Shown one piece after another: positions 976 through 64,000 of a DNA stretch of 64,000 nt. This stretch comes from Ascidiella aspersa (lineage: Eukaryota). Position 1 is the stretch's first letter; each line of letters starts with the position of its first letter. The notes beneath the pieces were generated by a model. The model was given only the letters and a program-made list of their open reading frames with translations. It made no database searches and had not been told where the DNA came from. Location: NCBI GenBank assembly GCA_963924565.1, contig OZ004613.1:20274001-20338000 (forward strand), written 5' to 3'. The position numbers and the translations under genes were made by a program.

Positions 976-1287
976 CTGAAAGAAACATTTTTTTCTTTAA
1001 TAAATATACATGAAAACTAATAAATATCCTAGTAAAAATACCTTTCTCAATAGAAAATTTCTTGTAATTTTTTTGTGCACAATTTTTAAAACATTTACGA
1101 TAACTCCAAATCCTTAATTAAACAAACTTCATTATTTTCGTTCAGCTTGTTTTACAATTTTTTGTGTTTTAAAATTCAATTTAATTTTTCATAAATGCAC
1201 TCCATACATGCAAGCAAAAATGCTCAAAAAAGTTTTACAGCTAGAATGTACATTATAAGAGATTTGATAGTTTTTGTATAATATCAC

Positions 1288-1462
1288 CTTTAAACATTTC
1301 TGGAGAAAATCCATACTTTGAATATTCAGGTACAGCTGGTGGATCCCCCTCTTGTACAGGCTCTGGGGCTGCTTGCTTTGGGTTTAATTGCATATGCCGC
1401 ATGAAAATATACCTGTCTTCAGCATGAATTAAATCCAGCATTGATTGGTTCATCACATCACA
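1288..1462 (-). CDS. AHR: AHR exon, PAS-A (175 nt)
   Basis: CDVMNQSMLDLIHAEDRYIFMRHMQLNPK...PEMFK; acceptor ttttcag; donor G|gtgata (phase 1) fits the next exon. Confidence 0.88.
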
Positions 1463-1612
1463 CTGAAAATAATGGTAATTATTTTTGGCAATTCTTGTAC
1501 ATAGGGTTACTAACATTTTATATTGTTGTTTCAATGTTTAATAATAGTTTTTTAGTGTTTTTTATGTGTAAGGTAGCATATTCAATAGGAATATGCAAAT
1601 GCCATTATATAC

Positions 1613-5000: not shown

Positions 5001-5335
5001 TTGAACTCCCGGAGTAAAACTAATCGAGACGAATACACGGACAAGTCAAATTGCTTAAACAAATCCAGACTGTATATATAAACTAATATATATATATTTA
5101 TATATATTATATATATATTAAAACGATTTTCCTAGGTTCATGGTTTATTTAACACATATTTTAAAGTAGAAAATTCACACACGATTATTTAGCATAGTTA
5201 ACCTAATAATTTTATTATTCTTTGCTGCTACAAAAAAAAGTGTTTGAAATAACGCTTCACATGTTTGCTAAACTGGTTTGACACGATGGCGCAGTCTGTC
5301 AGTTTCGGGCTGGCTGCAACATTTTGAAGCAATAC

Positions 5336-5520
5336 CTGCGTGGTAGTTCTTGTTGCGAAAGTAGGACACCGCGAGCCTGAGAATGGAAAGCTTGTCAAGT
5401 TTGTTAAGCACTTCTTCGGGAAACGGAATAAGCTTTGCAAGGTGATCGAGTTCATGGTTGAGCCTATCTCTATGCCTCTTGCTCGGGTTGGTTTTGCCCT
5501 CTTGCTGCGCGTCCTTTTCC
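5336..5520 (-). CDS. AHR: Aryl hydrocarbon receptor, bHLH exon (185 nt)
   Basis: Encodes [61 protein letters not shown], with the AHR signature [11 protein letters not shown]...[10 protein letters not shown]. Acceptor ttttgcacag, donor G|gtatt; phase 2 in, phase 1 out. Confidence 0.95.
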
Positions 5521-5698
5521 CTGTGCAAAACCGACATAAACTTATTAATAATGCATTGGCTTCCGGCTTCTGTCGCGGGAAATGAAGGCGAGCGACGCAC
5601 TGGACTCGACCACACATCATCAATCGACTTGAATGGTTTTAAGGCGACTTGTGTAATGTTTTGTCAGCTTACGTAATTCTATAGGATACGCCACTTAC

Positions 5699-30561: not shown

Positions 30562-30971
30562 TTAGTGATGCTGTTGATCCATCTCGTTTAACATTTCAAC
30601 ATGTTCTTGTGCCTCTTCTGAGAACAAGTCTTTCATATCTAGAGAGTTGTCTAGTCGAGAATCCTCTTCAGACATCTTCTCATTATCTGTCCAAACATTT
30701 TTAGACGCATCAAATTAATAAATTTTAATTGGATAAGTAACTTTAAATTAACTTGCAACCAGAACAACCGCAATTATTTATGAACTAAAATAACCATAAA
30801 AATTCGAAACGTATGTCCTTTATCAGACACAAAAAATAACTAACTTGCACTATCGTAGCGCCTTCGGGAGTAGTACCTTCTTCTTCGGCTCAACCAATGG
30901 AAGAGAAATGCGTCAACATTTGCGGTGGAGATAACCAAAACCAATAGCAGAAGCAAGCAAAGTTTGTCCAT
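30562..30971 (-). CDS. Secreted Trp/Arg/Tyr-rich peptide precursor, copy A (putative antimicrobial peptide, 83 aa); coding exons 30971-30845 and 30686-30562
   Basis: MDKLCLLLLLVLVISTANVDA-FLFHWLSRRRRYYSRRRY-DSANNEKMSEEDSRLDNSLDMKDLFSEEAQEHVEMLNEMDQQHH*. GT-AG phase-1 intron; 5'UTR intron 31122-30972; TATA 31173-31179; AATAAA 30527-30532. Confidence 0.88.
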
Positions 30972-31122
30972 CTAAAAGTACAAAAAATTTCAGTTATATA
31001 AATTGAAAACAACAACATTAGTGGTTATTTGTTAGAGTTAACATAAACTTAAATAATAGTATAAAAAAGTTACAAAAACTTCTGTTATCTCTGTGATTCA
31101 CGAAGTGTCTCATCTAACTTAC

Positions 31123-31345
31123 CTTGAAGTGCTGTTGCAAGTCAATAGTGCCAGATTATAGCTATGCCCCTTTTATATAACGCTGGCGCAGCTGTTCAAA
31201 TTTGTTATTGGCTGGAGAAGGGTTTTTCCGTGAAGCATATAAGGTCAACAATTTGGAGTCGTTGGACTTTTTCATCGCGACGAGGCAGAATATTATTGAA
31301 CGGAAATTTAGTGTTACACTTGTTAAAATATTTCCACGAGAACTA
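31123..31345 (-). promoter_or_regulatory. Copy A promoter and non-coding exon 1
   Basis: CAGCTG followed by TATATAA (31173-31179); donor AAG|gtaagt at 31123/31122; same layout in copies C and D. Confidence 0.7.
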
Positions 31346-43847: not shown

Positions 43848-46701
43848 CTATAGACGAAATACCCGACGTTGCCCAGGTTAAATAGAATATTTACCAGTTA
43901 TTTTAACTGGTTCAAAGTTAATTACACCACAACTATCGCCATAATGTACGAAGTCTACCTGAATTTTGTCTGGTTAAACAAAATGAAACAATCCAACATA
44001 CTGTGGGCTCATTATCACAATTGTACGTTACGTTGTTACATGTCAAATTGCTGGCCTCATGTTATTTACCATGAACATTTTTTTAATGTCTAACAAATTT
44101 GCTTATGCCTAAACGTTTGCACTGCGTGTCACTAAATAGAAGTTTCAAATCATGTCATGTGTTTCAAATCATGTCATGTCATGTGTTTCAAATCATGTCA
44201 TATCGTGTGTCTAAAAAAAACGTTAACCTAATGCTTCCCCACAATCAGAGTAACACCCCACAGCCTGTGTGAAAGCGGCATTAATGGAATGTCGTGTTTA
44301 ATTATGTGACTTATCTGCGTGGCTCTAAAGATCTAATTCTTGGTCTCCGTAAATTGCCATTAAATTTTGCATTTGGTTAAAACAGTGTAAAACTAACGTA
44401 TAAAAAGCAGTTTTGTGTCAGAAATGAGTCGCTAAAGGTAGGGCGCGAACGCGCTCTGACGATTTAATCACTAATCACGTGTTACCAGCATTGTATAATC
44501 TTCTTCCTGAAGCCACTATATGTTGTAGCCGATAATTTAAAAAATACATTTAACATCAAAACAAATTACAACGTTGTGTGTTTTTTAAAATGAAGCTACT
44601 AAGCACACAACTTTGGCTAAAGACGTCCCGCATATTTTACGTAACGAAAACCCGTGACATATGTCGATCAAAAATTACCAACAAACATGAAAAAGTCGTA
44701 ACACCAATTGTTCAAATCGCGCGAAATTCAAGCAAATACGTAATCCCGGTAGGTAGCATATTGCATCCAACGAAAATAAATCCCGTTTGAAAAGAAAATT
44801 TGCTTGCTGTTCAAACCGCTGTAATAAACGACATATTTTGCAAACTCAGTCCATATGTTGCGTAGAATATACTCGGTTAGGGTTGCTGTGCGTTGTCTGT
44901 GTGAGCGTCCTAATGCCTCATAAATGTTAAGGAAACCGCTGCAATAAACGTAATATTTTACGCAACAAACACCCGTGACATATGTTGATCGAAAATCACT
45001 AACAAACGTAAAAAAGTCGTATCAGCAATTGTTTAAAATGCGCGAAATTTAAGAAAATACGTAATCCCGGTAGGTACCATGCATCCAACGAAAGAAAATC
45101 CCGTTTGAAAAGACAATTTGCTTAGTGTTCAAACCGCTGCACACGATATTTTGCAAACTTAGGCCAAATGTTGCGTAGTTTATATTCGGTTTGGTTAGGG
45201 TTGCTGTACGTGTCTGTGTAAGTGTCTTAATACCTCATGAAAGAATCCTAAAAACGCAATATTTTGCGAACTCTGCCAAGAAATGCGTGGATAAACACAT
45301 TGTAAGAAGCCATTAGGGTTAGGCCTCAATCACTGTCACAATATTGTTGGTAAGGTTTGTTGTCGATATCCGTGTAGGTTTCCTGATGTTTATTCAAAGT
45401 ATGTTTATAAAAGTGAAGAATGGTAAACCTTTGCACTAAACGCCTGATTAAGCTGCGTCCAACGTCAGAAAAACCCGTAACTCTTGCTTTTTACGTAATC
45501 CCGGTACCATACTTCTTCCAACGTATAAGTAAATTCTCGCTTGAAACTGAAAATTGGCTACTATTTAACCGCTGCAAGGACTAAATAGCCAACGGCTAAG
45601 CACGTCAAACATCTTTTAAGTTAAATACATTAAAATTTAGTTTTGATTAGGGCAATATACTTATATTGATTTTTTATGAAACGCAGGTAATTGCGACCAA
45701 AAATAAAGTTTTGCGCGGTTACGTTCTAAATTTTACGCGGTAACAGAAATCAATAAGTTCCTAAACTTAATAGTCTTTAGCTGGAAACATGTAACCTTAC
45801 TTTGTTAAGGAAATATACTTACGTTGATTTTTTTATGTCCAGGAAGATAATTGCGCTACTTAATTTGATTTTTTATGTACAGGCAGGTAATTGCGCTTTT
45901 TACGTAATCCCGGTACCATACTTCTTATTTGAACGTAAGTAAAATCTCGCTTGAAACTGAAAATTGGCTACTATTAAAACCGCTGCAAGGACCAAATACA
46001 CAACGGCTAAGCACGTCAAACATATTTTAGGTTTAAAACAATAAAACATATTTTTGTAGGGGCAATATACCTAATTTGATTTTTGATGTCAACGCAGGTT
46101 ATTGCGCTTGAACAAAGGGTGTTGCGCGGTTACGTTATGAGGTTTTCCTAAACATAATATTCTTTAGTTGTTAACGTTAAAATTTTACTTTATTAAGGAA
46201 AAATACTTAATTTTATTTTTTTATTTCCAGGAAGATAATTGGGCTTGAAAAAAGTTTTGCACGGATACGTTAAATAGTTTTATTAAACCAATATACTTAA
46301 TTTGATTTTTATGTCCAGACAGGTAAATGCACTTGAAAAAAAGTTTTGCGCGGATATGTAAAACTTGGACTATCTTTTACGTACTGCGACAACAAACGCG
46401 ATATTTTGCAAACTCTGCCTAAATTTGGCACTGTTGAACTTAAGTCTTTACTTGGATAGTTGCATACGTTTGTTAACATAAATATTAACATGTGTTATGT
46501 CGCTCGCGCGCCCTGGGAGAGGCAAGCACACGGCGGGGAGTCGCCGCTCCTTTTGTTAGCCGACGACCCCTTGCAATGCCAGCGACTGTAGTCGATGACG
46601 GCGTTTGCTCTGCCAGCGACGGTTAGTCAACGGACCGGGCGAACATCTTGCCACACACACACACACACACATCTCACAAATCTTTTCTTTTATTATGTAG
46701 A
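43848..46701 (-). mobile_element. Non-autonomous Helitron (2854 bp)
   Basis: On the minus strand: A|TCTACATAATAAAAG...(GT)n at the 5' end and a hairpin cctgggcaacgtcggg...ctatag|T at the 3' end. Inserted at A|T without TSD; removing it restores the TATA-to-exon-1 sequence seen in copy D. Internal direct repeats (~44600-45240, ~45485-46250). Confidence 0.82.
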
Positions 46702-46908
46702 TGCATAACGATAATCTGGCACTATTGACTTGCAATAGCACATCAAGTTAAGTTAGATGAGTGACTTCGTGAGAGTTGACAAAGTCGTTGTCACTTTTAT
46801 TTATACTGGTAATTAGGTTTCTGTTAAATCTAACAAATGACCAGTATTGTTGGTTTTTCAATTCAAAAACCTGAAACCCATTTTGTAAGTTTAGAATCTA
46901 AACTTTAG

Positions 46909-47316
46909 ATGGACAAACTCCGCCTATTTCTGCTATTGGTGTTGGTTGTCAACGCCGTAACTGTTGACGCGTGGTGGCACTATTGGTATACCCGAAGAAG
47001 GAGACGCTGGGATGGTGAAAGTTAGTCGTATTTTTGTTTATGATAACAACAGACGTTTCGTAATGTTATAATTGTTATTTTAGTTCAAACACATCCCAAG
47101 TTGTCCTGGTTGCATGTTAATGAAAAGTTACTTAAGTTTATCCAATTAAAATATGGTAATTTTTTTGCGTTTAAAAATATTTTAACAGTTCATAAAAATA
47201 TGTCCAAAGAGGATGCTCAAATAGAGAACTTTCTAGATACGGAAGAAGACTTGCTGCCAGATGAGGCACAAGAACTTATTGAAATGTTCAACGAGGTGGA
47301 TCAACAGCATCACTAA
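46909..47316 (+). CDS. Secreted Trp/Arg/Tyr-rich peptide precursor, copy B (putative antimicrobial peptide, 79 aa); coding exons 46909-47020 and 47189-47316
   Basis: MDKLRLFLLLVLVVNAVTVDA-WWHYWYTRRRRRW-DGEIHKNMSKEDAQIENFLDTEEDLLPDEAQELIEMFNEVDQQHH*. ORF and coding splice sites are intact; AATAAA 47346-47351; promoter interrupted. Confidence 0.82.
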
Positions 47317-52868: not shown

Positions 52869-53341
52869 GGATAAAGTTTCAATGCGTATAGGCACCATAC
52901 CGCTTCCATACCGCCAAACCAGTTTTTTTTACTAGGTCCTTTTATTACCAGGCCATCCATTCATAGTCTCGAATTTATTTAAACCTAGATACCATTTGCA
53001 TGTTTGTGTACTACGTTAAACGATACTCTTATAGGCTTTCTATATGTAGGTTGCTTGTTTTAAACTCCCCCTAATAACGTAACTTTGTCATCTCAATTTT
53101 TTTATTGTTTTGATAAGAAAATTATTTTACTTTCACCCCTGCTCGATAGTCATATGCGATTAAACCAAACTTGACTGTCCCAGTTGGAATCTAGAACTTT
53201 GACAACGTATTAAGTTCAACGTTTAACGTTTAGTAAATCGCGGTGTGTAAAAACTGGGTACCTTGAAAGTTTATGCAACACAAAGAAAACGCCATTGCTT
53301 TCAAATTTTATTATACTTTGCAGTATATACCAAATATCAAC

Positions 53342-53747
53342 TTAGTGCTGTTGTTGATCCACCTCGTTGACCATTTCAACAAGTTCTTGTGCCTCCTCTG
53401 GCAGCAAGTCGTCTTTCATATCTAGAGACTTCTCTAATTGAGAATCATCTTCAGACATCTTTTCATTATCTGGCGAAACATTTTTTAAACGCAACAAATT
53501 ACCATATTTTAATTGGATAAACTTAAGTAAGTTTAAGCTAACATGCAACCAGAACAACCGTGAATGTTTTTGAACTATCAGACACAAAAATCGACTAACT
53601 TGCAACATCGTAGCGCCTTCTGCGATAGTAGTAGTAGTACCTTCTTCGGGAGTAGTACCTTCTTCTTCGAGAGTACCACCACCATGCGTCGACATTAACG
53701 GTGGAGATAGCCAACACTAATAGCAAAAGCAAGCAGAGTTTGTCCAT
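53342..53747 (-). CDS. Secreted Trp/Arg/Tyr-rich peptide precursor, copy C (putative antimicrobial peptide, 91 aa); coding exons 53747-53600 and 53469-53342
   Basis: MDKLCLLLLLVLAISTVNVDA-WWWYSRRRRYYSRRRYYYYYRRRRY-DVANNEKMSEDDSQLEKSLDMKDDLLPEEAQELVEMVNEVDQQQH*. 5'UTR intron 53890-53748; TATA 53940-53946; AATAAA 53307-53312. Confidence 0.9.
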
Positions 53748-53890
53748 CTAAAAATACAAAAAGGGTTTCAATTTTTTTTAAGCAACACTACTAGTCATCT
53801 GATATATTTAACACAAACTGATTAAAAGCACAAATAAAAGATGCAACAACTTCTGTTAACTCTGTGATTCACGTCACTCATCTAACTTAC

Positions 53891-54100
53891 CTTGAACTGC
53901 AGTTGCAAGTCCGTAGTGCAAGATCATAGCTATGCAACCTTATATAACGCTGGTGCAGCTGTTCAAATTTTAGGGTTCTCCCGTGACGCATAAAAGGTAA
54001 ACAATTTAGAGTCGTTGGACTTATCCATGGCGAGGAGGCAGAATATTTATTGAAAGGAAATTTAAAGTTACCCTTGTGATAAAATTTCCACGAAAACTAT
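53891..54100 (-). promoter_or_regulatory. Copy C promoter and non-coding exon 1
   Basis: CAGCTG plus TATATAA (53940-53946); donor AAG|gtaagt at 53891/53890. Confidence 0.7.
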
Positions 54101-57100
54101 TGAGAAAATTTTATTTACTTTTAAAATACACCGATTTATCTAAATACAGAAACGTTTCTATATCGGCCAAATTGTTGCCTGAAATTAATAACACCGAATC
54201 GCAGTAATATCTACAGCAAAATTGTATCTAAACCAGTCAGAAGATGCCTCAAACACATCGGTGTAATATCTCAATGGTCCAAAGACGCTAAAACCGTAGG
54301 AAGATAGTAAGGGACGATTTGATGCCCCCATCTTGGCGTCGGCCGTTTTGGTATGCGAGTCTCTATTTTGGCACTGGACTGTTGCCTTTGTTTGTGTTTT
54401 GGGGTTTGAATGTTTTGTTCAGTTTGGAAGTTTAAATCTTATTTCTTACTATAACCTTATTCCGACTGTCAGGTATAAGTCCTATTTTTGTTTTAGTGTG
54501 AATTGTATTTTACAGGGCTGCGGACCTGCGGTGTTGGCAAAAAGAAATTTTACAATTGATCCAACTCTGCTGGGGTTTAGTAGAACTCATCGACCCACAA
54601 TACACAGGTACAACATAGTTCACCATATGCTTTTCCACATTTTCAATTAACAGTTTGCGACCTTATCAGTTTAAAAATGTTGGTACTGCGCATGCGCACG
54701 TCGGACCCTGGACACAGGTAGTCTCACGTAATCTTGCTTGAGTCCCAAGTCCTGAGCTCGACCATTGAAAAACAAAGACTTCGTCGAGTCCCTAATCCCA
54801 AGACCAAGTACGCAGACCTGGTGTTTCATTGCGACTTTTATGTTAGGCGAATTTCGGTTTTGATGCCGCAGTTGTTCTCTATAAGACAGTTCCAGGCTTC
54901 TTGTGGCTTTGAACTTTAGATACTTCTATTGGGAACTTCAAATTGATTGAACTAAGTAAATTATTTATTAGTATTCATGGGTAATAACCGTAAACTTTTT
55001 ACTGTCAAACATATAATTTTATGGGGGTTAGCAACGAAGCTGTTGGGTGTACTGTACATCAATCTATACTCTAAAAACGAATTTACAAACAAACGAAAAG
55101 TACATTGACGATTAAACTTAACTTAACATTGGTTTTATTTTGTCGTTTCTATGATTATCTATGGACTAAAAATATTCTAACCGAAAAAGTTGCCACGTCT
55201 TAATAATACCACATGCTGAAAACGATAAGCTTAAGAAACGGCTATATTGATGAGAATTCTTAGAATTTGTCAGAATCAAATATTCCAAAACCAAAAAATT
55301 GCTTTAGTTTTAGTTAGAAAAGCCGTGACGGGAAGCGATTAAATTTAAGATTGGCATACGGATGGAAGTGTCTATTTTTTTCAATGAAAACACACACACA
55401 TTTTTTGTTTAGAACTCCCGTATCAACAACGGTTTGGCTACTTTATCTATTTGATCATTCGATAATAACTGAGGTCGATTTGAAGAAAAAGCGACACAAA
55501 TGCAGTGCGAAGTGCGAAAAACTCGCGTCTATTTCGTTTAAAATGCAAACTGGGGCTGTAGTTTGCCCAGGTGTGGCTTAAACTAAAGATAAACAAACTT
55601 ATTTCTTCGCATTCTTATGTGCTCTCAACAAAAAATAGCTGAATTGATTTAACTCGACTAAAGTTGCTTCTTTACGATGTTTTCTAACATTATAACAGTT
55701 AAAAGTTACACCTACCAATTAAGCACCCCTAAATCCGTTCCCGGGTGTGTTATACCAAGTGACACGCTGTTTTTTTACAGGAATCTTTCGAGTCGAAGCG
55801 GGTAAATCATGGTTCAGTTCAAACTATATACCCTACTCATTTTATGTCTTCGTTTTTTATATAATCTGCTTTTATTATTCGCATGTAATTCTTGATACGC
55901 TTCGCTTTATATATCTGTCATCAATTCGCCATAAACCAAGCGATCCTTCCGAATATTAATTTCGTTCTACGGGCAAATTTGTTACTTTTTGGTTTAAAAT
56001 TCAAGCTTTCATTTAGAATGTATAGATGAACAAGACGCATAAAGAACAGATGAATATAAATCTCGTAAAATGGTAGCCTATTAACTATTGGGTTAAAATA
56101 TGTCAATCTTGATGTTATAAGAGATTGTATGTGGTCGATATACTAAATTTTGTTATAGCTTAATGACGGAATACATTCGATCAAAGCGTAAAAACTACAT
56201 TTTAAAATTTTAATTTTTTAACAGTACAGAGGGCGCTTTTAGTTTCTTAAGGTGTCAAAAGTAAAACATATTCGGAAGACAGCTGAGATTGGCGAATCAC
56301 AAAACTCCATTTATGTACTTTAGACAAGCAAAAAATAAAGTTTAGGGCGGCATGCCTGGATCAGGTCCTGGTAAGCCCAGTAGTGGTCCACGAGACAATT
56401 TTCAGTGGGATATGGAGCTCTTTGAAAATCTTGTTTGTATATAATTTAATTTACTAAATATAGTGTGCCCGCCAATAAATATTATCGACCGCCGACTATT
56501 TGGCGGGTTTCTGTAGATTATTTTTTGACTAAAAGTTTTCACACCAAGAAAGGCGTCACATATTGATCATAATGGCCCATGCTGAAAACGACCAGCCTTA
56601 AGAAACGGCTATATTGATAAACAGTTCTTAGAATATGTCCGAATCAAATATTCCAAAAACAAAATATTGCTTTAGTATTAGTTAGAAAAACCATGACGAG
56701 AAGCAAACAAATTAAAAATCGGCCTATGGATATTATATAGAAGTGTCTATTTTTTCAAGGAAAATGCACACACAATTCTTTGTTTAAAACTCCCGTATCA
56801 ACAACGGTTCGGCTACTCTATATTCTATTTGATCATGCAATAGAACCCGAAAACTAAACAAATAACATTTCTTAATTTTGTATTTGTTAAGACTGTTCTT
56901 CAACCTTAAACACTTTGGCTGGCACAACTAATAAAGCCTATAGTGATAATTTATTTCCTTCCTAAAACCAGTCGACTGATGACAGTTTTTTTTTACGATA
57001 CAGGTATTTTGTCCACAAAAGATTAAATTGACTAAACATTGTTCAAATGAAAACCACATGAAGAAAATTACACAGTAAATTACCCTTTAACAACAAATAC

Positions 57101-60100
57101 ACTAGTCGGAGTTGGTACATAACTTTTTTAATTCCTTGCACTGCTGTGTTAATTACAACTCCCTATTTTCCTGATTTAAGATTTAAAGGAAGACTGTTTT
57201 TGCTTCTTATGAAACAGTGCAATAATATATATCTGCAATTTTTTTTGTTTTACTCGTATGTTAACAAATAGAGCTTAAGGCAATGCAGTTAATTTCCTTT
57301 TAACTTTTTGTCCAACAAAGTTATCTAGGGTCGCCAACCCACGGTCCGCAAGCCGCATACAGCTTTTATAATGTGTTTATGATTGTTTGGACCGACAATA
57401 TAACTTTGCCCAGAAAATACACCCCGTCGTCCAGGTAGAATAGAGTCACAAACCGGCGCGGATTTAAGGGGACAATCATGTTGCATCAACTCTCAAAATT
57501 TTATGTTAAATTGGCATGGCACGTCACGAAAAAGTTTAGTCGGAACGTAACGTAACAAAGCAGGCATTTTCTCGAGACCAGCTGTTCTTGGATCTTCCCA
57601 TGAGCAAATGGGCAACTTCATAGGCTGAATAAAAGAAATAGCTATTCGATTTATGCAGGTGTACTCAACTGGCGGACCCCGATTCGGGTCCGGACATGTG
57701 GAGTGTTGAACGTGATTCTCAAAGAATGCCCAATGTACTAAAAAATATTTAAATGTGGTACGATTGAATGACATTTTCGACGAACTTGCTAAGAGGCATA
57801 TGACCATTGACCAACCCTTAAGCAGAAAGGCCGCATTGCCACACAAATTTTGATGAGCCGCCAAACCCATTAAATTAAAGGAGACGACGTCATAAGTTAC
57901 GTGATATTGTGACGTCATAAAAACAACTTAACATATAAACACCCGCTCTTCCAGTGTGAAGTCGAGCGCAAATATGCACGTAAATGTCGGCCTAGTTTAA
58001 AGTAGTTTAGGAAACGCTGTTGGCCACACTGCTATAGGTTTCTTTCATTATTCTTGATCGGACTACGACGTGGCCCGCTTTGCTGAATTAGCCTAAGACC
58101 ACCTTTCGTGAGGCCCACAGTTCTTGAACAGTTGACATGACGGCAATTTATAATTAAACCTTTTACTCAAACAATATAATCAATTTGTCACGCAGACGTC
58201 AAATAATGCACTCGGCCGAAACAAAATATAAAATATTGTTCAAAAATGCAAACATTCCGATGTTAATATGACTTACAAACAGTTTTATGTATCCATCTTG
58301 TATGGTACGTGTATTGGTTCTACACTGTCATAAAATAAATCTTGCGATGACTTTAAGTTACACGACAAATACCAAATACATAGGTCGATTTAAAATGTTA
58401 AGGAATTTTGTGTGTTAAGTACATTTATTATTTAATGCTGTTGGGCATTCAAACTATAGTTGACAAACCTTAAGATATTTAGCCTGCTTCTGTATTATAT
58501 CATCCTCCACATCTGGATAATCCTTATGATAAACATTTTGGTAATTCTTTTATATGAATACTTTTGCACAGCGTCAAAATTTCCAAAAAAGTGCTGCTTG
58601 TTTCACACCGTCCTAATTAAGGTTTACCCATATCCAAGGAAAACGAATTAATTGTGTGGTTAACCTGACGCGTGACTATACTCGTCAGAATATTCGTGTC
58701 CCTGTCGCGCGCCACGTATTGTCGCCCTACAGGCAACAGTTTGAACACCACTGGTTGAATGGGGTATTTAACAGATTTGTAATAAAGGCCCAATCGAATC
58801 TTAACATTCAAAATGTGCGCAAACGCTTGGTATAGTGACAGGGTTATATAAACACTTTCGCATCGTTTCAGAAATATATTTTTCATTCTCAGCAAGGAAA
58901 ATAGCTGATGCAAAATTACAGTTGTATAATAGGAGTTTTACTTTCTATGGTATAACTGATTTATAAAATATTAGTCCCCAATTTTCTGTAATTGGAGACA
59001 TTGTTTCACAGCGGGGGTCGCACTTGCTGGTTGTACGTGACATTTATAGACATAATTTATTAACAGTATAGTTTAAATATATCCACTTGGTTGAATCGAA
59101 ATCTTTAAAAGGTTCATTTTTCGCGTTTTATGACTAATGTTCACGGAACAAATAAGTATTAGTCTACAAACATTTCGTTAGGATGTTTTGCAATAACATT
59201 TGTATGTTTTCTGTAAAACAGCGCCTTTTTCCAGAGAAACAAAATTTTAATTTTTACCCTACTTATATGGGCCCTTTTTCACAATAAAATTTGGGTTATA
59301 TAATACAGTATATTGCTAATGTTTGTAAGCCCAACTCAGTAAATTTGCATAGGTTAACTATAAATACATTTTGTCATGTTGATTGCAGCTGCGGAGCTCA
59401 ATAACAAATTGAGACGTCACAATATCACGTAACTTATGACGTCGTCTCCTTTAATTTAATGGGTTTGGAGGCTCATCAAAATTTTTAAAGTGGCAATGCG
59501 GCCTTTCTGCTTAAGGGTTGGTCAATGGTCATATGCCTCTTAGCAAGTTCGTCGAAAATGTCATTCAATCGTACCACATTTAAATATTTTTTAGTACATT
59601 GGGCATTCTTTGAGAATCACGTTCAACACTCCACAGGTCCGGATCCGAATCGGGGTCCGCCAGTTGAGTACACCTGCATAAATCGAATAGCTATTTCTTT
59701 TATTCAGCCTATGAAGTTGCCCATTTGCTCATGGGAAGATCCAAGAACAGCTGGTCTCGAGAAAATGCCTGCTTTGTTACGTCACGTTCCGACTAAACTT
59801 TTTCGTGCCGTGCCATGCCAATTTAACATAAAATTTTGAGAGTTGATGCAACATGATTGTCCCCTTAAATCCGCGCCGGTTTGTGACTGTATTCTACCTG
59901 GACGACGGGGTGTATTTTCTAGGCAAATAAGCAAAGTTATATCGTCGGTCCAAACAATCATAAACACATTATAAAAGCTGTATGCGGCTTGCGGACCGTG
60001 GGTTGGCGACCCTAGATAACTTTGTTGGACAAAAAGTTAAAAGGAAATTAACTGCATTGCCTTAAGCTCTATTTGTTAACATACGAGTAAAACAAAAAAA

Positions 60101-63100
60101 ATTGCAAATATATATTGCACTGTTTCATAAGAAGCAAAAACAGTCTTCCTTTAAATCTTAAATCAGGAAATAGGGAGTTGTATATAACACAGCAGTGCAA
60201 GGAATTAAAAAAGTTATGTACCAACTCCGACTAGTGTATTTGTTGTTAAAGGGTAATTTACTGTGTAATTTTCTTCATGTGGTTTACATTTGAACAATGT
60301 TTAGTCAATTTAATCTTTTGTGGACAAAATACCTGTATCGTAAACAAAAACTGTCATCAGTCGACTGGTTTTAGGAAGGAATTAAATTATCACTATAGGC
60401 TTTATTAGTTATGCCAGCCAAAGTGTTTAAGGTTGAAGAACAGTCTTAACAAATACAAAATTAGGAAATTTTATTTGTTTAGTTTTCGGGTTCTATTGCA
60501 TGATCAAATAGAATATAGAGTAGCCGAACCGATGTTGATACGGGAGTTTGAAACAAAGAATTGTGTGTGCATTTTCCTTGAAAAAATAGACACTTCTATA
60601 TAATATCCATAGGCCGATTTTTAATTTGTTTGCTTCTCGTCATGGTTTTTCTAACTAATACTAAAGCAATATTTTGTTTTTGGAATATTTGATTCGGACA
60701 TATTCTAAGAACTGTTTATCAATATAGCCGTTTCTTAAGGCTGGTCGTTTTCAGCATGGGCCATTATTATCAATATGTGACGCCTTTCTTGGTGAGAAAA
60801 TTTTAGTCAAAAAATAATCGACAGGAACCCGCCAAATAGTCGGCGGTCGATAATATTTATTGGCGGGCACACTATATTTAGTAAATTAAATTATATACAA
60901 ACAAGATTTTCAAAGAGCTCCATATCCCACTGAAAATTGTCTCGTGGACCACTACTGGGCTTACCAGGACCTGATCCAGGCATGCCGCCCTAAACTTTAT
61001 TTTTTGCTTGTCTAAAGTACATAAATGGAGTTTTGTGATTCGACAATCTCAGCTGTCTTCCGAATATGTTTTACTTTTGACACGTTAAGAAACTAAAAGC
61101 GCCCTCTGTACTGTTAAAAAATTAAAATTTTTAAATGTAGTTTTACGCTTTGATCGAATGTATTCCGTCATTAAGCTATAACAAAATTTAGTATATCGAC
61201 CACATACAATCTCTTATAACATCAAGATTGACATATTTTAACCCAATAGTTAATAGGCTACCATTTTTCGAGATTTATCTTTATCTGTTCTTTATGCGTC
61301 TTGTTTATCTATACATTCTAAATGAAAGCTTGCATTTTAAACCAAAAAGTAACAAATTTGCCCGTAGAACGAAATTAATATTCGGAAGGATCGCTTGGTT
61401 TATGGCGAATTGATGACAGATATATAAAGCGAAGCGTATCAAGAATTACATGCGAATAATAAAAGCAGATTATATAAAAAACAAAAAACGAAGACATAAA
61501 ATGAGTAGGGTATATAGTTTGAACTGAACCATGATTTACCCGCTTCGACTCGAAAGATTCCTGTAAAAAAACAGCGTGTCACTTGGTATAACACACCCGG
61601 GAACGGATTTAGGGGTGCTTAATTGGTAGGTGTAACTTTTAACTGTTATAATGTTAGAAAACATCGTAAAGAAGCAACTTTAATTGAGTTAAATCAATTC
61701 AGCTATTTTTTGTTGAGAGCACATAAGAATGCGAAGAAATAAGTTTGTTTATCTTTAGTTTAAGCCACACCTGGGCAAACTACAGCCCCAGTTTGCATTT
61801 TAAATGAAATAGACGCGAGTTTTTCGCACTTCGCACTGCATTTGTGTCGCTTTTTCTTCAAATCGACCTCAGTTATTGATCAAATAGAAAAAGTAGCCAA
61901 ACCGTTGTTGATACGGGAGTTCTAAACAAAAAATGTGTGTGTGTTTTCATTGAAAAAAATAGACACTTCCATCCGTATGCCAATCTTAAATTTAATCGCT
62001 TCCCGTCTCGGCTTTTCTAACTAAAACTAAAGCAATTTTTTGGTTTTGGAATATTTGATTCTGACAAATTCTAAGAATTCTCATCAATATAGCCGTTTCT
62101 TAGGCTTATCGTTTTCAGCATATGGTATTATTAAGACGTGGCAACTTTTTCGGTTAGAATATTTTTAGTCCATAGATAATCATAGAAACGACAAAATAAA
62201 ACCAATGTTAAGTTAAGTTTAATCGTCAATGTACTTTTCTTTTGTTTGTAAATTCGTTTTTAGAGTATAGATTGATGTACAGTACACCCAACAGCTTCGT
62301 TGCTAACCCCCATAAAATTATATGTTTGACAGTAAACAGTTTACGGTTATTACCCATGAATACTATAATAAATAATTTACTTATTTCAATCAATTTGAAG
62401 TTCCCAATAGAAGTATCTAAAGTTTAAAGCCACAAGAAGCCTGGAACTGTCTTATAGAGAACAACTGCGGCATCAAAACCGAAATTCGCCTAACATAAAA
62501 GTCGCAATGAAACACCAGGTCTGCGTACTTGGTCTTGGGATTAGGGACTCGAGGAAGTTTGTGTTTTTCAATGGTCGAGCTCAGGAATTGGGACTCAAGC
62601 AAGATTACGTAAGACTACCTGTGTCCAGGGTCCGACGTGCGCATGCGCAGTACCATCATTTCGACACTGATAAGGTAGCAAACTGGGAATTTTAATGTGG
62701 AAATGCATATGGTGAACTATTTTCCACCTATGTATAGTGGGTCGAGGAGTTCTACTAAACCCCAGCAGATTTGGATCAATTGTAAAATTTCTTTCTGCCA
62801 ACACCGCAGGTCCGCAGCCCTGTAAAATACAATTCACAGTAAAATAAAAATAGGACTAATAGCTGACAGTCGGAATAAGGTTAGCAAGAAATAAGATTTA
62901 AACTTCCCCCCAAAAAAACATTCTAACCCAAAATCCAAACAAAGGCAATAGTCCAGTGCCATGGTGACTCGCATACCAAAACGGCCGACGCCAAGATGGG
63001 GGCATCAAATCGTCCCTTACTATCTTCCTACGGTTTTAGCGTTTTTGGACCATAGAGATATTACACCAACGTGTTTGAGGCATCTTCTGACTGGTTTAGA

Positions 63101-63224
63101 TACAATTTTGCCGTAGATGTTACTGCGATTCGGTATTATTAATTTCAGGCAACAATTTTGCCGATATAGAAACGTTTCTGTTATAAATAAATCGGTGTAT
63201 TTTAAAAGTAATTAAAATTTTCTC

Positions 63225-63435
63225 AATAGTTTTCGTGGAAATTTTATCACAAGGGTAACTATAAATTTCCTTTCAATAAATATTCTGCCTCCTTGCCATG
63301 GATAAGTCCAACGACTCTAAATTGTTTACCTTTTATGCGTCATGGTAGAACCCTAAAATTTGAACAGCTGCACCAGCGTTATATAAGGATGCATAACTAT
63401 GATCTTGAACTACTGACTTGCAACTGCACTTCAAG
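63225..63435 (+). promoter_or_regulatory. Copy D promoter and non-coding exon 1
   Basis: CAGCTG 63365-63370; TATATAA 63380-63386; donor AAG|gtaagt at 63435/63436; the intron ends tttttag directly before the ATG at 63579. Confidence 0.72.
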
Positions 63436-63578
63436 GTAAGTTAGATGAGAGACGTGAATCACAGAGTTAACAGAAGTTGTTGTAACTTTTATTTGTGCTT
63501 TTAATCAGTTTATGTTAAATATATCAGATGACCAGTAGTGTTGCTTAAAAAAAATTGAAACCCTTTTTGTATTTTTAG

Positions 63579-63984
63579 ATGGACAAACTCTGCTTGCTTT
63601 TGCTATTAGTGTTGGCTATCTCCACCGTTAATGTCGACGCATGGTGGTGGTACTCTCGAAGAAGAAGGTACTACTCCCGAAGAAGGTACTACTACTACTA
63701 TCGCAGAAGGCGCTACGATGTTGCAAGTTAGTCGATTTTTGTGTCTGATAGTTCAAAAACATTCACGGTTGTTCTGGTTGCATGTTAGCTTAAACTTACT
63801 TAAGTTCATCCAATTTAAATATGGTAATTTGTTGCGTTTAAAAAATTTTTCGACAGATAATGAAAAGATGTCTGAAGAGGATTCTCAATTAGAGAAGTCT
63901 CTAGATATGAAAGACGACTTGCTGCCAGAGGAGGCACAGAAACTTGTTGAAATGGTCAACGAGGTGGATCAACAACAGCACTAA
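63579..63984 (+). CDS. Secreted Trp/Arg/Tyr-rich peptide precursor, copy D (putative antimicrobial peptide, 91 aa); coding exons 63579-63726 and 63857-63984
   Basis: MDKLCLLLLLVLAISTVNVDA-WWWYSRRRRYYSRRRYYYYYRRRRY-DVANNEKMSEEDSQLEKSLDMKDDLLPEEAQKLVEMVNEVDQQQH*. A|gttagt...cgacag phase-1 intron. Confidence 0.9.
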
Positions 63985-64000
63985 GTTGATATTTGGTGTA

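What the first reader, a model, noticed from the sequence alone, without database searches (positions are those of the whole stretch)
63642..63716. Oligo-Tyr/Trp blocks between Arg runs: possible ribosomal precursors of DOPA/TOPA or bromo-Trp modified peptides
Seen: the C/D core parses as WWWYS-RRRR-YYS-RRR-YYYYY-RRRR-Y; A gives FLFHWLS-RRRR-YYS-RRR-Y; B gives WWHYWYT-RRRRR-W. Known: ascidian blood-cell peptides are heavily modified at these residues (styelin D: bromotryptophan, DOPA, dihydroxyarginine; tunichromes and plicatamide: short DOPA/TOPA peptides), and polybasic runs are proprotein-convertase sites. Inference: the core may be kept whole and hydroxylated or brominated (catechol/cation chemistry as in mussel foot proteins, for tunic repair or metal binding). 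Alternatively it may be cut into tiny aromatic peptides such as YYYYY or YYS, which would offer a gene-encoded route to tunichrome-like compounds. No modifying enzyme is visible in this window.
Basis: inference. Interest (0 to 1): 0.75.

Follow-up and report, generated by a model that had tools for sequence, protein, structure and literature searches.

The report
Sea-squirt Tyr/Trp/Arg secreted peptide genes
The flagged stretch is the core of a real, strongly transcribed small gene, one of about a dozen in this sea-squirt genome, built like an antimicrobial-peptide precursor; whether its tyrosines and tryptophans are chemically modified, or cut out as tiny peptides, cannot be decided from sequence.

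Summary

It lies in exon 2 of a three-exon gene: an untranslated exon 1, then signal peptide plus core, then an acidic tail. Raw RNA reads show the exon 2-exon 3 joint (GT..AG, 387 reads) at depths in the hundreds.

At least 11 paralogues exist. The core is built from an 18-base in-frame repeat encoding SRRRYY.

The core is not an amphipathic helix, but the tail is. The tail charge is -10 to -13 against +5 to +13 for the core.

The only credible outside relative is an uncharacterised Ciona protein. Published Ciona peptides of similar build kill microbes at low micromolar levels in sea-water salt (PMC7387483).

Best reading (0.55): a defence peptide kept essentially whole, with modification plausible but untested. 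The tunichrome-route reading is disfavoured but not excluded.

The scan noted this family before, on this window (s1-801575) and, if its stop-cut copy is L010, on another contig (s1-801638). It is a new member of a known kind.

The parts
63380..63387 (+). Gene D: TATA box (TATATAAG). It is preceded by a conserved CAGCTG E-box, shared by copies A, C, D and E.
   Evidence: Read directly and in the alignment of the five genes. Promoter function is inferred.
63410..63435 (+). Gene D: exon 1, untranslated. The start is approximate. It ends before the GTAAGT donor at 63436.
   Evidence: The donor is read. In one search, 123 RNA reads that end at the exon 2 acceptor carry loose letters resembling the 3' end of this exon (11 of 13 by eye). 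No read was laid on exon 1 itself, so the start is inferred.
63579..63641 (+). Gene D: signal peptide, 21 codons (MDK, a Leu-rich core, then VDA before the cut).
   Evidence: RNA depth here is 138-480. In the relative L008 the model gives a helix at 3-25. The cleavage site is inferred from the -3/-1 rule.
63642..63716 (+). Gene D: the flagged core, 25 codons. Composition is 11 Arg, 9 Tyr, 3 Trp and 2 Ser, with charge +11. It holds 2.5 copies of the 18-base unit encoding SRRRYY.
   Evidence: It is covered by RNA reads. At the one diagnostic base, 471 of 1198 reads carry the C/D-type letter; the rest come from a paralogue.
63717..63726 (+). Gene D: first residues of the acidic tail (Asp-Val-Ala) plus the first base of a split codon. 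This is the end of exon 2.
   Evidence: The joint at window 63726 to 63857, GT..AG, is seen in 387 reads from 82 start places.
63727..63856 (+). Gene D: intron 2, 130 bases, phase 1.
   Evidence: the intron is skipped by 387 reads, and depth inside it is 0.5-1 against hundreds in the exons.
63857..64000 (+). Gene D: exon 3, encoding the acidic amphipathic-helical tail (41 whole codons, 63859-63981), with the stop at 63982-63984. The 3' UTR runs past the window end to about window 64030.
   Evidence: 34 molecules end at L002 1952, which is window 64030; helical moment 0.283; 1.65% of shuffles reach it.
53342..53980 (-). Gene C, the mirror copy of D. ATG at 53747, core 53610-53684, exon 2 ends at 53600, exon 3 starts at 53469, stop at 53342-53344. 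The span starts above the TATA box.
   Evidence: Exon 2 is 100% identical to D, while the introns are 96.5-96.9% identical. C and D lie in the two arms of a large inverted duplication.
46909..47316 (+). Gene B. Signal 46909-46971, core WWHYWYT-RRRRR-W at 46972-47010, exon 2 ends at 47020, exon 3 starts at 47189, stop at 47314-47316.
   Evidence: Its upstream region has a (CA)n run in place of the TATA box, and the intron 1 donor is altered. Expression was not tested.
30562..31185 (-). Gene A. TATA near 31178, ATG at 30971, core FLFHWLS-RRRR-YYS-RRR-Y at 30855-30908, exon 2 ends at 30845, exon 3 starts at 30686, stop at 30562-30564.
   Evidence: Expression was not tested.

Best explanation
The stretch is the mature-peptide region of a small secreted prepropeptide. 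It belongs to a young, tandemly and invertedly duplicated family of at least 11 genes in a sea-squirt genome.

Shown:
- The gene has three exons, and the exon 2-exon 3 joint is seen directly in RNA reads. It is transcribed on the + strand at high level.
- It encodes a 21-residue signal peptide, a 13-30-residue core made only of Arg runs and Trp/Tyr/His/Phe blocks closed by Ser or Thr, and an acidic tail of about 45 residues with an amphipathic helix.

Inferred:
- The signal peptide is removed after VDA or VEG.
- The acidic tail (charge -10 to -13) masks the cationic core (+5 to +13) during transport and storage.
- The tail is then cut off on the N-terminal side of the conserved Asp. A published discussion says styelins and clavanins are cut this way.
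- That leaves a disordered Arg/aromatic block peptide ending in Tyr or Trp.
- The peptide acts as a salt-tolerant host-defence peptide. Arg would bind anionic lipids or nucleic acids, and Trp/Tyr would anchor at the membrane interface.
- Conversion of Tyr to DOPA and bromination of Trp are plausible by the styelin D precedent, but nothing here shows them.
For: - Gene model and transcription: the GT..AG joint 63726 to 63857 is seen in 387 reads. Depth is in the hundreds with about 6% of the run read, nearly all first mates lie on one strand, and the 3' end is at about 64030.
- Architecture and charges in 9 family members.
- Family of at least 11 genes, of which 10 have open frames. The eleventh carries a TGA in this assembly.
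- Exon 2 is identical in C and D, while their introns differ by about 3%. My estimate of the chance of that is about 0.01.
- All core length differences are in frame.
- The tail is an amphipathic helix: moment 0.283, best angle 100 degrees, 1.65% of shuffles reach it. The model gives helix 67-82.
- An aromatic residue sits directly before Asp at the core-tail border in 8 of 9 members.
- The only credible outside relative is Ciona intestinalis F6WKX8 (E 3.5e-4 against 1.84 billion proteins; named; hhalign 96%).
- Paper PMC7387483 (Table 1 and sections 6-8 read). Ciona KH.C1.640 has a WW-x-S-RRR start and an RRRR-Y-D border followed by an acidic tail. Its synthetic 14-mer has MIC below 3.125 uM on E. 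coli and S. aureus, works in 500 mM NaCl, and the gene is induced by LPS in haemocytes. KH.C7.94, built of S-RRR modules, has MIC 6.25 uM.
- Myticalins of mussels have the same gene layout and precursor build (PMC5577615, passages).
Against: - No activity, processing or cell type was or could be tested. The tissue of the RNA run is coded.
- The core is not an amphipathic helix. Its helical moment is 0.07-0.22, and 80-94% of shuffles reach or exceed it. It is modelled as disordered with pLDDT under 50. It therefore fails the defining feature of the class under which the Ciona peptides were published.
- RRRR followed by Tyr is itself a good convertase motif (general knowledge), so survival of the whole core in the secretory pathway is an assumption.
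- Oligo-Tyr blocks are unusual for antimicrobial peptides.
- Tail charge does not track core charge (r = -0.23 over 9 members).
- No NF-kB consensus lies near any of the four genes. The window has 3 matches against 2.2 expected, none within 4 kb of a start codon.
- Coding parts of A, B and C are not clearly better conserved than the introns.
- The likeness to KH.C1.640 was judged by eye only.
- The RNA reads carry fixed differences from D (G>T at 63879 in 521 of 521 reads; A>C at 63940 in 327 of 327). They therefore come from a non-identical allele or sister copy. Most reads over the middle of the core come from a paralogue.
Confidence: 0.55

Rival explanations
1. Polyprotein reading. Convertases cut after each Arg run and a carboxypeptidase trims the Arg. 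This releases several tiny aromatic peptides (WWWYS, YYS, YYYYY). These may then be hydroxylated to DOPA/TOPA polyphenols of the tunichrome type.
For: - Identical YYS-RRR units repeat 2-3 times, as in multi-copy peptide precursors.
- Runs of 3-5 Arg fit convertase motifs (general knowledge).
- Tunichromes An and Pm are three Tyr-derived residues. Their biosynthesis was called unexplored, with a ribosomal route proposed (PMC3039461, passages and Table 1).
- Expression is very high.
- My paper searches found no gene for any tunichrome.
Against: - After trimming, the N-terminal block and every YYS unit end in Ser or Thr. All listed tunichromes, plicatamide and halocyamines end in a decarboxylated aromatic residue.
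- No listed natural product equals YYS or YYYYY.
- Arg is 38-44% of the core, and the tail carries a matching opposite charge. That is what one expects if Arg is payload.
- Possible distant relatives with the same kind of signal peptide separate their Arg runs by FG, CIG or T. Cutting these would give meaningless fragments (the homology is weak, E 0.3-1.7).
- The plicatamide pattern is absent: 0 exact matches, and 520 against 547 control matches at up to 3 mismatches. The two top hits examined have no signal peptide.
- Whole Ciona analogues are active.
Confidence: 0.2
2. Material reading. The core is kept whole, its Tyr is turned into DOPA, and it serves as a cross-linking, adhesive or metal-binding peptide in blood cells or tunic. 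The chemistry would be cation-pi and catechol, packed as a condensate with its own acidic tail. It would resemble the highly aromatic DOPA protein ferreascidin.
For: - Aromatic residues make up 39-58% of the core and Arg 32-44%.
- The core is a disordered block pattern with a period of 6-8 residues rather than a helix, except the short single-run core of B, whose best period is 18.
- The oppositely charged tail sits in the same chain.
- DOPA-rich peptides of 1.5-2 kDa form metal-bound condensates and glue in Halocynthia holdfasts (PMC13079984, abstract and section 8).
- Ferreascidin exists as 'a highly aromatic protein containing DOPA' from stolidobranch blood cells. I saw only the title, in a reference list. 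Its basic, Tyr-rich composition is recalled, not checked.
Against: - The Halocynthia peptides are described as rich in Glu/Gln, Ser and Gly beside DOPA, with no mention of Arg in the main text (0 occurrences of 'arginine'). Their sequences are in a figure I could not see.
- No modification is shown here.
- No oxidase gene is linked to the cluster.
- The closest published relatives were shown to kill microbes.
Confidence: 0.15
3. No product of use. The family is a young, drifting set of duplicated small ORFs around a coding minisatellite, transcribed but without a selected function.
For: - Coding and intron identity are similar among A, B and C.
- Copy B has lost its TATA box.
- One copy carries a stop codon in this assembly.
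- The family is nearly absent from public protein sets.
Against: - Ten of 11 frames are open, and all core indels are in frame.
- Exon 2 of C and D is identical while the introns differ.
- Expression is high and correctly spliced.
- The same build is kept in a Ciona relative.
- RNA reads with the flanks of the stop-bearing copy do not show the stop.
Confidence: 0.05

Closest known systems
Ciona intestinalis candidate antimicrobial peptides KH.C1.640 and KH.C7.94 (Ohtsuka and Inagaki 2020, PMC7387483), and the uncharacterised Ciona protein F6WKX8
   Same: - The order is the same: signal peptide, Arg-run/aromatic core, acidic helical tail.
- KH.C1.640 starts WW-x-S-RRR and ends RRRR-Y-D before the tail, as the D core does. 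This was judged by eye from Table 1.
- KH.C7.94 is made of x-x-S-RRR modules.
- F6WKX8 matches the family profile (E 3.5e-4; hhalign 96% over 58 columns).
   Different: - The Ciona cores have no oligo-Tyr blocks and no 18-base SRRRYY repeat.
- The tails are not alignable by eye.
- The Ciona peptides were filed as alpha-helical, whereas these cores are not amphipathic helices.
- No tool comparison with KH.C1.640 was made, because its full sequence is not among the stored proteins.
Styelins and clavanins of Styela clava (blood-cell antimicrobial peptides)
   Same: - The precursor order is the same: signal, cationic mature peptide, C-terminal pro-piece (PMC8659048 passage).
- Cleavage before Asp is stated in the PMC7387483 discussion.
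- Styelin D shows that ascidian blood cells turn Tyr into DOPA, brominate Trp and hydroxylate Arg in such peptides.
   Different: - Styelins are Phe-rich amphipathic helices of 31-32 residues with Lys. No sequence likeness was tested.
- Whether this genome is a Styela was not established.
Myticalins of mussels (PMC5577615)
   Same: - The gene layout is the same. Exon 1 is 5' UTR only, the ATG is at the start of exon 2, exon 2 holds signal plus mature peptide plus the first tail residues, intron 2 is phase 1, and exon 3 holds the anionic tail.
- The signal and tail are conserved, and the Arg/Tyr-rich core is hypervariable.
- It is a multigene family with pseudogenes (passages).
   Different: - It is in another phylum, with no sequence relation, so the likeness is convergent.
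- Myticalins are Pro-rich (PRY repeats) and have a Lys-Arg site before the tail, which is absent here.
Tunichromes, plicatamide and halocyamines (small DOPA/TOPA/bromo-Trp peptides of ascidian blood cells)
   Same: They are made of the same residues (Tyr, Trp, His, Phe), and their genetic origin is unknown. The whole core would end in Tyr or Trp, the residue that is decarboxylated in those compounds.
   Different: - None of the listed structures is encoded in these cores.
- The N-terminal block and the YYS units bounded by Arg runs end in Ser or Thr.
- The plicatamide pattern is absent from the genome.

Membership tests
Ascidian signal / cationic / anionic defence prepropeptides (styelin, clavanin, Ci-MAM type) | N-terminal signal peptide | tested here: met
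   Twenty-one residues with a Leu/Val core and a small residue at -1 (VDA or VEG) in 9 of 9 members. The model gives a helix at 3-25. No dedicated predictor was on hand.
Ascidian signal / cationic / anionic defence prepropeptides (styelin, clavanin, Ci-MAM type) | Short cationic mature region followed by an anionic C-terminal pro-piece | tested here: met
   The core is 13-30 residues with charge +5 to +13, and the tail charge is -10 to -13, in 9 of 9 members. There is no covariation (r = -0.23).
Ascidian signal / cationic / anionic defence prepropeptides (styelin, clavanin, Ci-MAM type) | Removal of the pro-piece on the N-terminal side of an acidic residue | tested here: inconclusive
   Tyr or Trp sits directly before Asp in 8 of 9 members; L008 has His-Gly-Asp. 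The cleavage itself cannot be seen in sequence.
Ascidian signal / cationic / anionic defence prepropeptides (styelin, clavanin, Ci-MAM type) | Expression in blood cells and antimicrobial activity | not testable with these tools
   Transcription is shown, but the tissue of the run is coded. There was no assay.
[quoted passage not shown] | Cationic amphipathic alpha-helix | tested here: not met
   The helical moment is 0.07-0.22 in 7 cores, and 80-94% of 2000 shuffles reach or exceed it. The best period is 6.2-7.8 residues in six of the seven cores and 18 in the short single-run core of B. Core pLDDT is under 50 with no helix.
Ciona F6WKX8 / KH.C1.640-like peptides | Detectable sequence homology | tested here: inconclusive
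   F6WKX8 scores E 3.5e-4 in the profile search and hhalign 96%, E 2.9e-9. Both partners are short and of low complexity, with signal peptides. KH.C1.640 was compared by eye only.
Precursors of tunichrome-type or plicatamide-type peptides | Encodes a known product sequence | tested here: not met
   The back-translated plicatamide pattern gave 0 exact matches, and 520 against 547 control matches at up to 3 mismatches. The two top hits examined lack a signal peptide. No core holds Tyr-Tyr-Gly-Pro-Tyr.
Precursors of tunichrome-type or plicatamide-type peptides | Released peptide ends in an aromatic residue that can be oxidatively decarboxylated | tested here: inconclusive
   If cut at the Arg runs, the YYYYY block and the lone last Tyr of D end in an aromatic residue, while WWWYS and YYS end in Ser. 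If kept whole, the core ends in Tyr or Trp in 8 of 9 members.
Precursors of tunichrome-type or plicatamide-type peptides | DOPA, TOPA or bromo-Trp in the native product | not testable with these tools
   This needs mass spectrometry.
Multi-copy peptide polyproteins cut at basic sites | Repeated near-identical units, each flanked by basic sites | tested here: met
   YYS-RRR occurs once in A, C and D and two or three times in E and L005-L007. It is encoded by an 18-base tandem unit. Actual cutting was not tested.

The most novel reading that the evidence does not exclude
The Arg runs are cleavage sites, and the oligo-Tyr/Trp blocks are cut out and oxidised to DOPA/TOPA polyphenol peptides. These genes would then be the first gene-encoded route to tunichrome-like compounds, whose origin has been open for decades. 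The 18-base repeat would be a simple way to change the dose and kind of product.
Probability: 0.08. Interest if true: 0.85.

Novelty: new member of a known kind. Interest (0 to 1): 0.42.

Why it matters
Sea squirts are the closest invertebrate relatives of vertebrates, and their blood cells make heavily modified peptides whose genes are mostly unknown. This family is strongly expressed. None of the four full-length members I looked up by exact sequence is in the public protein collection. It consists almost wholly of the three residues that ascidians are known to modify: Tyr, Trp and Arg.

It gives mass spectrometrists exact masses to search for. It offers a simple, salt-adapted Arg/aromatic block design for peptide work. 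It also allows a cheap test of whether small catechol peptides can come from ribosomal precursors.

If the whole-peptide defence reading holds, it is a modest addition to a known kind.

Tried and rejected
- **Public protein sets.** A word-indexed search with the 84-aa intron-less member L008 gave 0 hits at E <= 0.01 among 186 candidates. The profile search of 1.84 billion representatives gave 3 hits. Two of them (P0001, P0003) are translated tandem repeats, which I discarded after reading them. A search with the Ciona hit found only itself. The four full-length members are not in the 15-billion collection.
- **Pfam.** The only match for L008 was a sub-threshold chance hit (18.2 bits against a cut-off of 27).
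- **ESM Atlas.** The best score was 0.80, which is noise level.
- **Plicatamide precursor in this genome.** Rejected.
- **NF-kB sites near the genes.** None.
- **Linked tyrosinase or peroxidase.** None within about 0.79 Mb.
- **Charge matching of core and tail.** No correlation.
- **The 117-aa ORF at 63631-63984 (and its twin at 53342-53695).** Rejected. It reads the core in another frame and runs through intron 2, which the RNA reads splice out.
- **Species identity.** Not established. The length rule of the protein search prevents using the bHLH exon. I rely on the Ciona relative and on unchecked scan notes that call this genome a sea squirt.
- **Print searches.** Searches found no description of this family. 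They cover only the held library.
- **Supplements.** These are closed. Those of PMC7387483 may hold the full Ciona precursors, and those of PMC13079984 hold details of the holdfast peptides.
- **Joined protein.** The exons were searched and aligned as separate rows, and charges were added as numbers.
Full report
**What is at the coordinates.** Reading from the ATG at 63579 gives a 50-codon open frame. The first 21 codons are a typical signal peptide.
- C (minus strand, 53610-53684) is identical to D.
- A (minus, 30855-30908) reads FLFHWLS-RRRR-YYS-RRR-Y.
- B (plus, 46972-47010) reads WWHYWYT-RRRRR-W.

A six-frame scan of the window for an aromatic pair followed by three or more Arg found 11 matches. 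Nine lie in these four genes. The two others have no signal peptide.

**Gene model and transcription.** All copies share the same layout:
- a TATA box about 30 bases before a short untranslated exon 1;
- a GTAAGT donor and an intron of about 140-170 bases;
- an acceptor directly before the ATG;
- exon 2, holding the signal peptide, the core and three to seven tail residues;
- a phase-1 intron of 130-170 bases;
- exon 3, holding 40-41 acidic residues, the stop and an AATAAA signal.

I laid one RNA run of raw reads (X9) and three runs of contigs on D (L002:1150-2150, which is window 63228-64228).
- In X9 the joint 63726 to 63857 (GT..AG, skipping 130 bases) is seen in 387 reads from 82 start places.
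- Depth is 138-1112 on exon 2 and 44-551 on exon 3, against 0.5-1 in the intron, with only about 6% of the run read.
- Nearly all first mates lie on the minus strand, which in most stranded libraries means RNA of the + strand.
- 34 molecules end at about window 64030.
- 123 reads ending at the exon 2 acceptor carry loose letters that resemble the end of exon 1 (11 of 13 by eye). No read was laid on exon 1 itself.

**Results that qualify the RNA evidence.** Two exon 3 positions differ from D in all reads: G>T at 63879 (521 of 521, the letter of copy C) and A>C at 63940 (327 of 327, found in none of C, D or E). The transcripts therefore come from a non-identical allele or sister copy in another animal.

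About 700 reads over the middle of the core run on into unlike sequence. That sequence matches the flanks of a paralogue (L010 on another contig). At the diagnostic base 63674, 727 of 1198 reads carry the paralogue's letter and 471 carry the C/D letter.

The 117-aa ORF at 63631-63984 reads through the intron and is an artefact.

**Family.** Exon-wise searches of the window's own genome gave the following:
- 12 places at E <= 2.3e-4 for exon 2 and 10 at E <= 1.4e-6 for exon 3;
- eight genes in about 87 kb on this contig (A to E, then three more);
- two identical tandem copies on a second contig;
- one copy on a third contig;
- one signal-plus-core-only match elsewhere on this contig.

Six members (L005-L010) lack intron 2. 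L005-L009 therefore give uninterrupted 72-84-aa frames; L010 carries a TGA. I used the four distinct uninterrupted frames, L008 and L009 being identical, as full-length proteins.

C and D sit in the arms of an inverted duplication (arms about 53326-57842 and 59490-64000, 95-99% alike). Exon 2 is identical in C and D, while their introns are 96.5-96.9% identical. At 3% divergence I estimate that zero changes in 148 bases has a chance of about 0.01.

Among A, B and C the coding parts are no better conserved than the introns (for A against C: signal 87%, core 79% plus 33 gapped columns, introns 79-85%, exon 3 87%). The family is young and the evidence for constraint is modest. All core length differences are multiples of three.

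The core is a tandem array of an 18-base unit encoding SRRRYY: 2.5 copies in D and 3.1 in E. This explains the alternating blocks.

**Properties of the product.**
- Core: 13-30 residues, 5-13 Arg, 7-13 aromatic residues, charge +5 to +13.
- Tail: charge -10 to -13.
- The two charges do not covary (r = -0.23, 9 members).
- The cores are not amphipathic helices. The moment at 100 degrees is 0.07-0.22, and 80-94% of shuffles reach or exceed it. The strongest period is 6.2-7.8 residues in six of the seven cores, a block pattern; the short single-run core of B gives 18.
- The tail is an amphipathic helix. Its moment is 0.283, its best angle is 100 degrees, and 1.65% of shuffles reach it.
- An AlphaFold model of L008 (mean pLDDT 61) has helices only in the signal peptide and at residues 67-82. 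The core has pLDDT below 50.
- A Tyr or Trp directly precedes Asp at the core-tail border in 8 of 9 members.

**Relatives elsewhere.**
- A family profile against 1.84 billion representative proteins found three hits. Two are translated repeats. The third is a 64-aa uncharacterised Ciona intestinalis protein, F6WKX8, of the same build. hhalign gives 96% probability.
- The word-indexed search with L008 gave nothing.
- The four full-length members are not in the 15-billion collection.
- Pfam and the ESM Atlas gave nothing usable.

**Literature.** A scan note (s1-801638) pointed to a published Ciona family, which I took to be PMC7387483. I read its Table 1, its peptide list and sections 6-8.
- Candidate KH.C1.640 has a core beginning WW-x-S-RRR and ending RRRR-Y-D, followed by an acidic helix.
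- Its synthetic 14-mer has MIC below 3.125 uM on E. coli and S. aureus and 12.5 uM on yeast. It stays active in 500 mM NaCl, and the gene is induced by LPS in haemocytes.
- KH.C7.94, made of S-RRR modules, has MIC 6.25 uM.
- The authors note that ascidian precursors lack dibasic sites at the border. They state that styelins and clavanins are cut before Asp.
- My comparison with these peptides is by eye.

Other papers, seen as passages only unless stated:
- Myticalins of mussels have the same gene layout and precursor order (PMC5577615).
Styelin D has 12 modified residues, including 6-bromo-Trp, four DOPA and a dihydroxy-Arg (PMC8659048).
- Tunichromes An and Pm are three Tyr-derived residues. 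Sp-1 is Dopa-Dopa-Gly-Pro-dehydrodopamine. Plicatamide is FFHLHFH-dehydrodopamine. [quoted passage not shown]
- A 2026 paper describes 1.5-2 kDa halogenated-DOPA glue peptides in Halocynthia holdfasts, rich in Glu/Gln, Ser and Gly (PMC13079984, abstract and section 8).
- For ferreascidin I saw only the title. Its composition is recalled.

**Weighing the readings.**

*Kept whole as a defence peptide.* This reading fits the architecture, the acidic masking tail, the conserved aromatic-Asp border, the large excess of Arg over what cleavage needs, and the activity of whole Ciona analogues. I give it 0.55.

*Cut at the Arg runs.* This reading is helped by the repeated YYS-RRR units and by the fact that RRRR-Tyr is a good convertase motif. 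However, the N-terminal block and the YYS units would end in Ser or Thr, not in the aromatic residue that ends every listed tunichrome-type compound. None of those compounds is encoded here. A plicatamide pattern is absent from the genome (0 exact; 520 against 547 control matches at up to 3 mismatches; the two top hits examined lack a signal peptide). I give 0.2 to cutting at all, and 0.08 to tunichrome-like products.

*Cross-linking or metal-binding material.* I give this 0.15.

*No function.* I give this 0.05.

No oxidase gene is linked. The nearest tyrosinase-domain match is at contig position 19.48 Mb, 0.79 Mb from the window, and a peroxidase cluster lies at 22.76-22.84 Mb. No NF-kB consensus lies near the genes.

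**Verdict.** The product is a secreted precursor whose Tyr, Trp and Arg could well be modified, but nothing here shows modification, and the tunichrome route is the less likely alternative.

The family is a new, unannotated member of the known ascidian signal-cationic-anionic peptide kind. Its unusual features are oligo-Tyr blocks and a coding 18-base repeat. The scan had already noted it on this window (s1-801575, s1-802525) and, if that note's stop-cut copy is L010, on another contig (s1-801638).

Noticed in passing
window 53326-57842 and 59490-64000: Genes C and D sit in the two arms of a large inverted duplication. Nine collinear arm pairs are 95-99% complementary, with a spacer of about 1.6 kb.
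   Followed up: partly
window 46650-46760: Copy B has a (CA)n run where the other copies have the CAGCTG box and the TATA box. Its intron 1 donor reads AAG/TTAAGT instead of AAG/GTAAGT. It may be silent or use another promoter.
   Followed up: no
L005-L010 against window genes A-E: Intron 2 is present in the five MDKL-type copies (A to E) and absent in the six MNKL-type copies. This is an intron gain or loss within a young family.
   Followed up: no
L010 about 1529-1531 (minus strand), and at L002 1586-1618: The copy on another contig has TGA inside the core in this assembly. About 700 RNA reads with that copy's flanks show no C>T at the matching base and have a shorter Tyr/His block. In that animal the copy, or a close sister, is therefore open, and it appears to be the most highly expressed member.
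   Followed up: partly
window 63362-63387; same place in A, C and E: A CAGCTG E-box lies about 10 bases before the TATA box and is conserved in 4 of 5 aligned copies.
   Followed up: no
window 1253-1534 and 5268-5615, minus strand: These are exons of a bHLH-PAS gene (Pfam HLH, E 1.2e-7). By eye it looks like an aryl-hydrocarbon-receptor type.
   Followed up: partly
L013, L014, L017 (other contigs): These small ORFs have a similar MNKL signal peptide followed by runs of 5-9 Arg and other cationic sequences, two of them ending in Gly. They may be more distant peptide families sharing a signal exon. The match is weak (E 0.3-1.7).
   Followed up: no
runs X2 and X1: A contig of an oligo-dT RNA library labelled as a seawater metagenome covers exon 3 from 3 bases before its start (95% alike). 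A contig of another run covers exon 2 plus the unspliced intron 2.
   Followed up: no
L002 1591-1614 (window 63669-63692): Twenty RNA reads from only 2 start places show a 24-base 'goes back' joint inside the core, hinting at a variant with an extra repeat unit. This matches the 24-base period seen by Tandem Repeats Finder.
   Followed up: no
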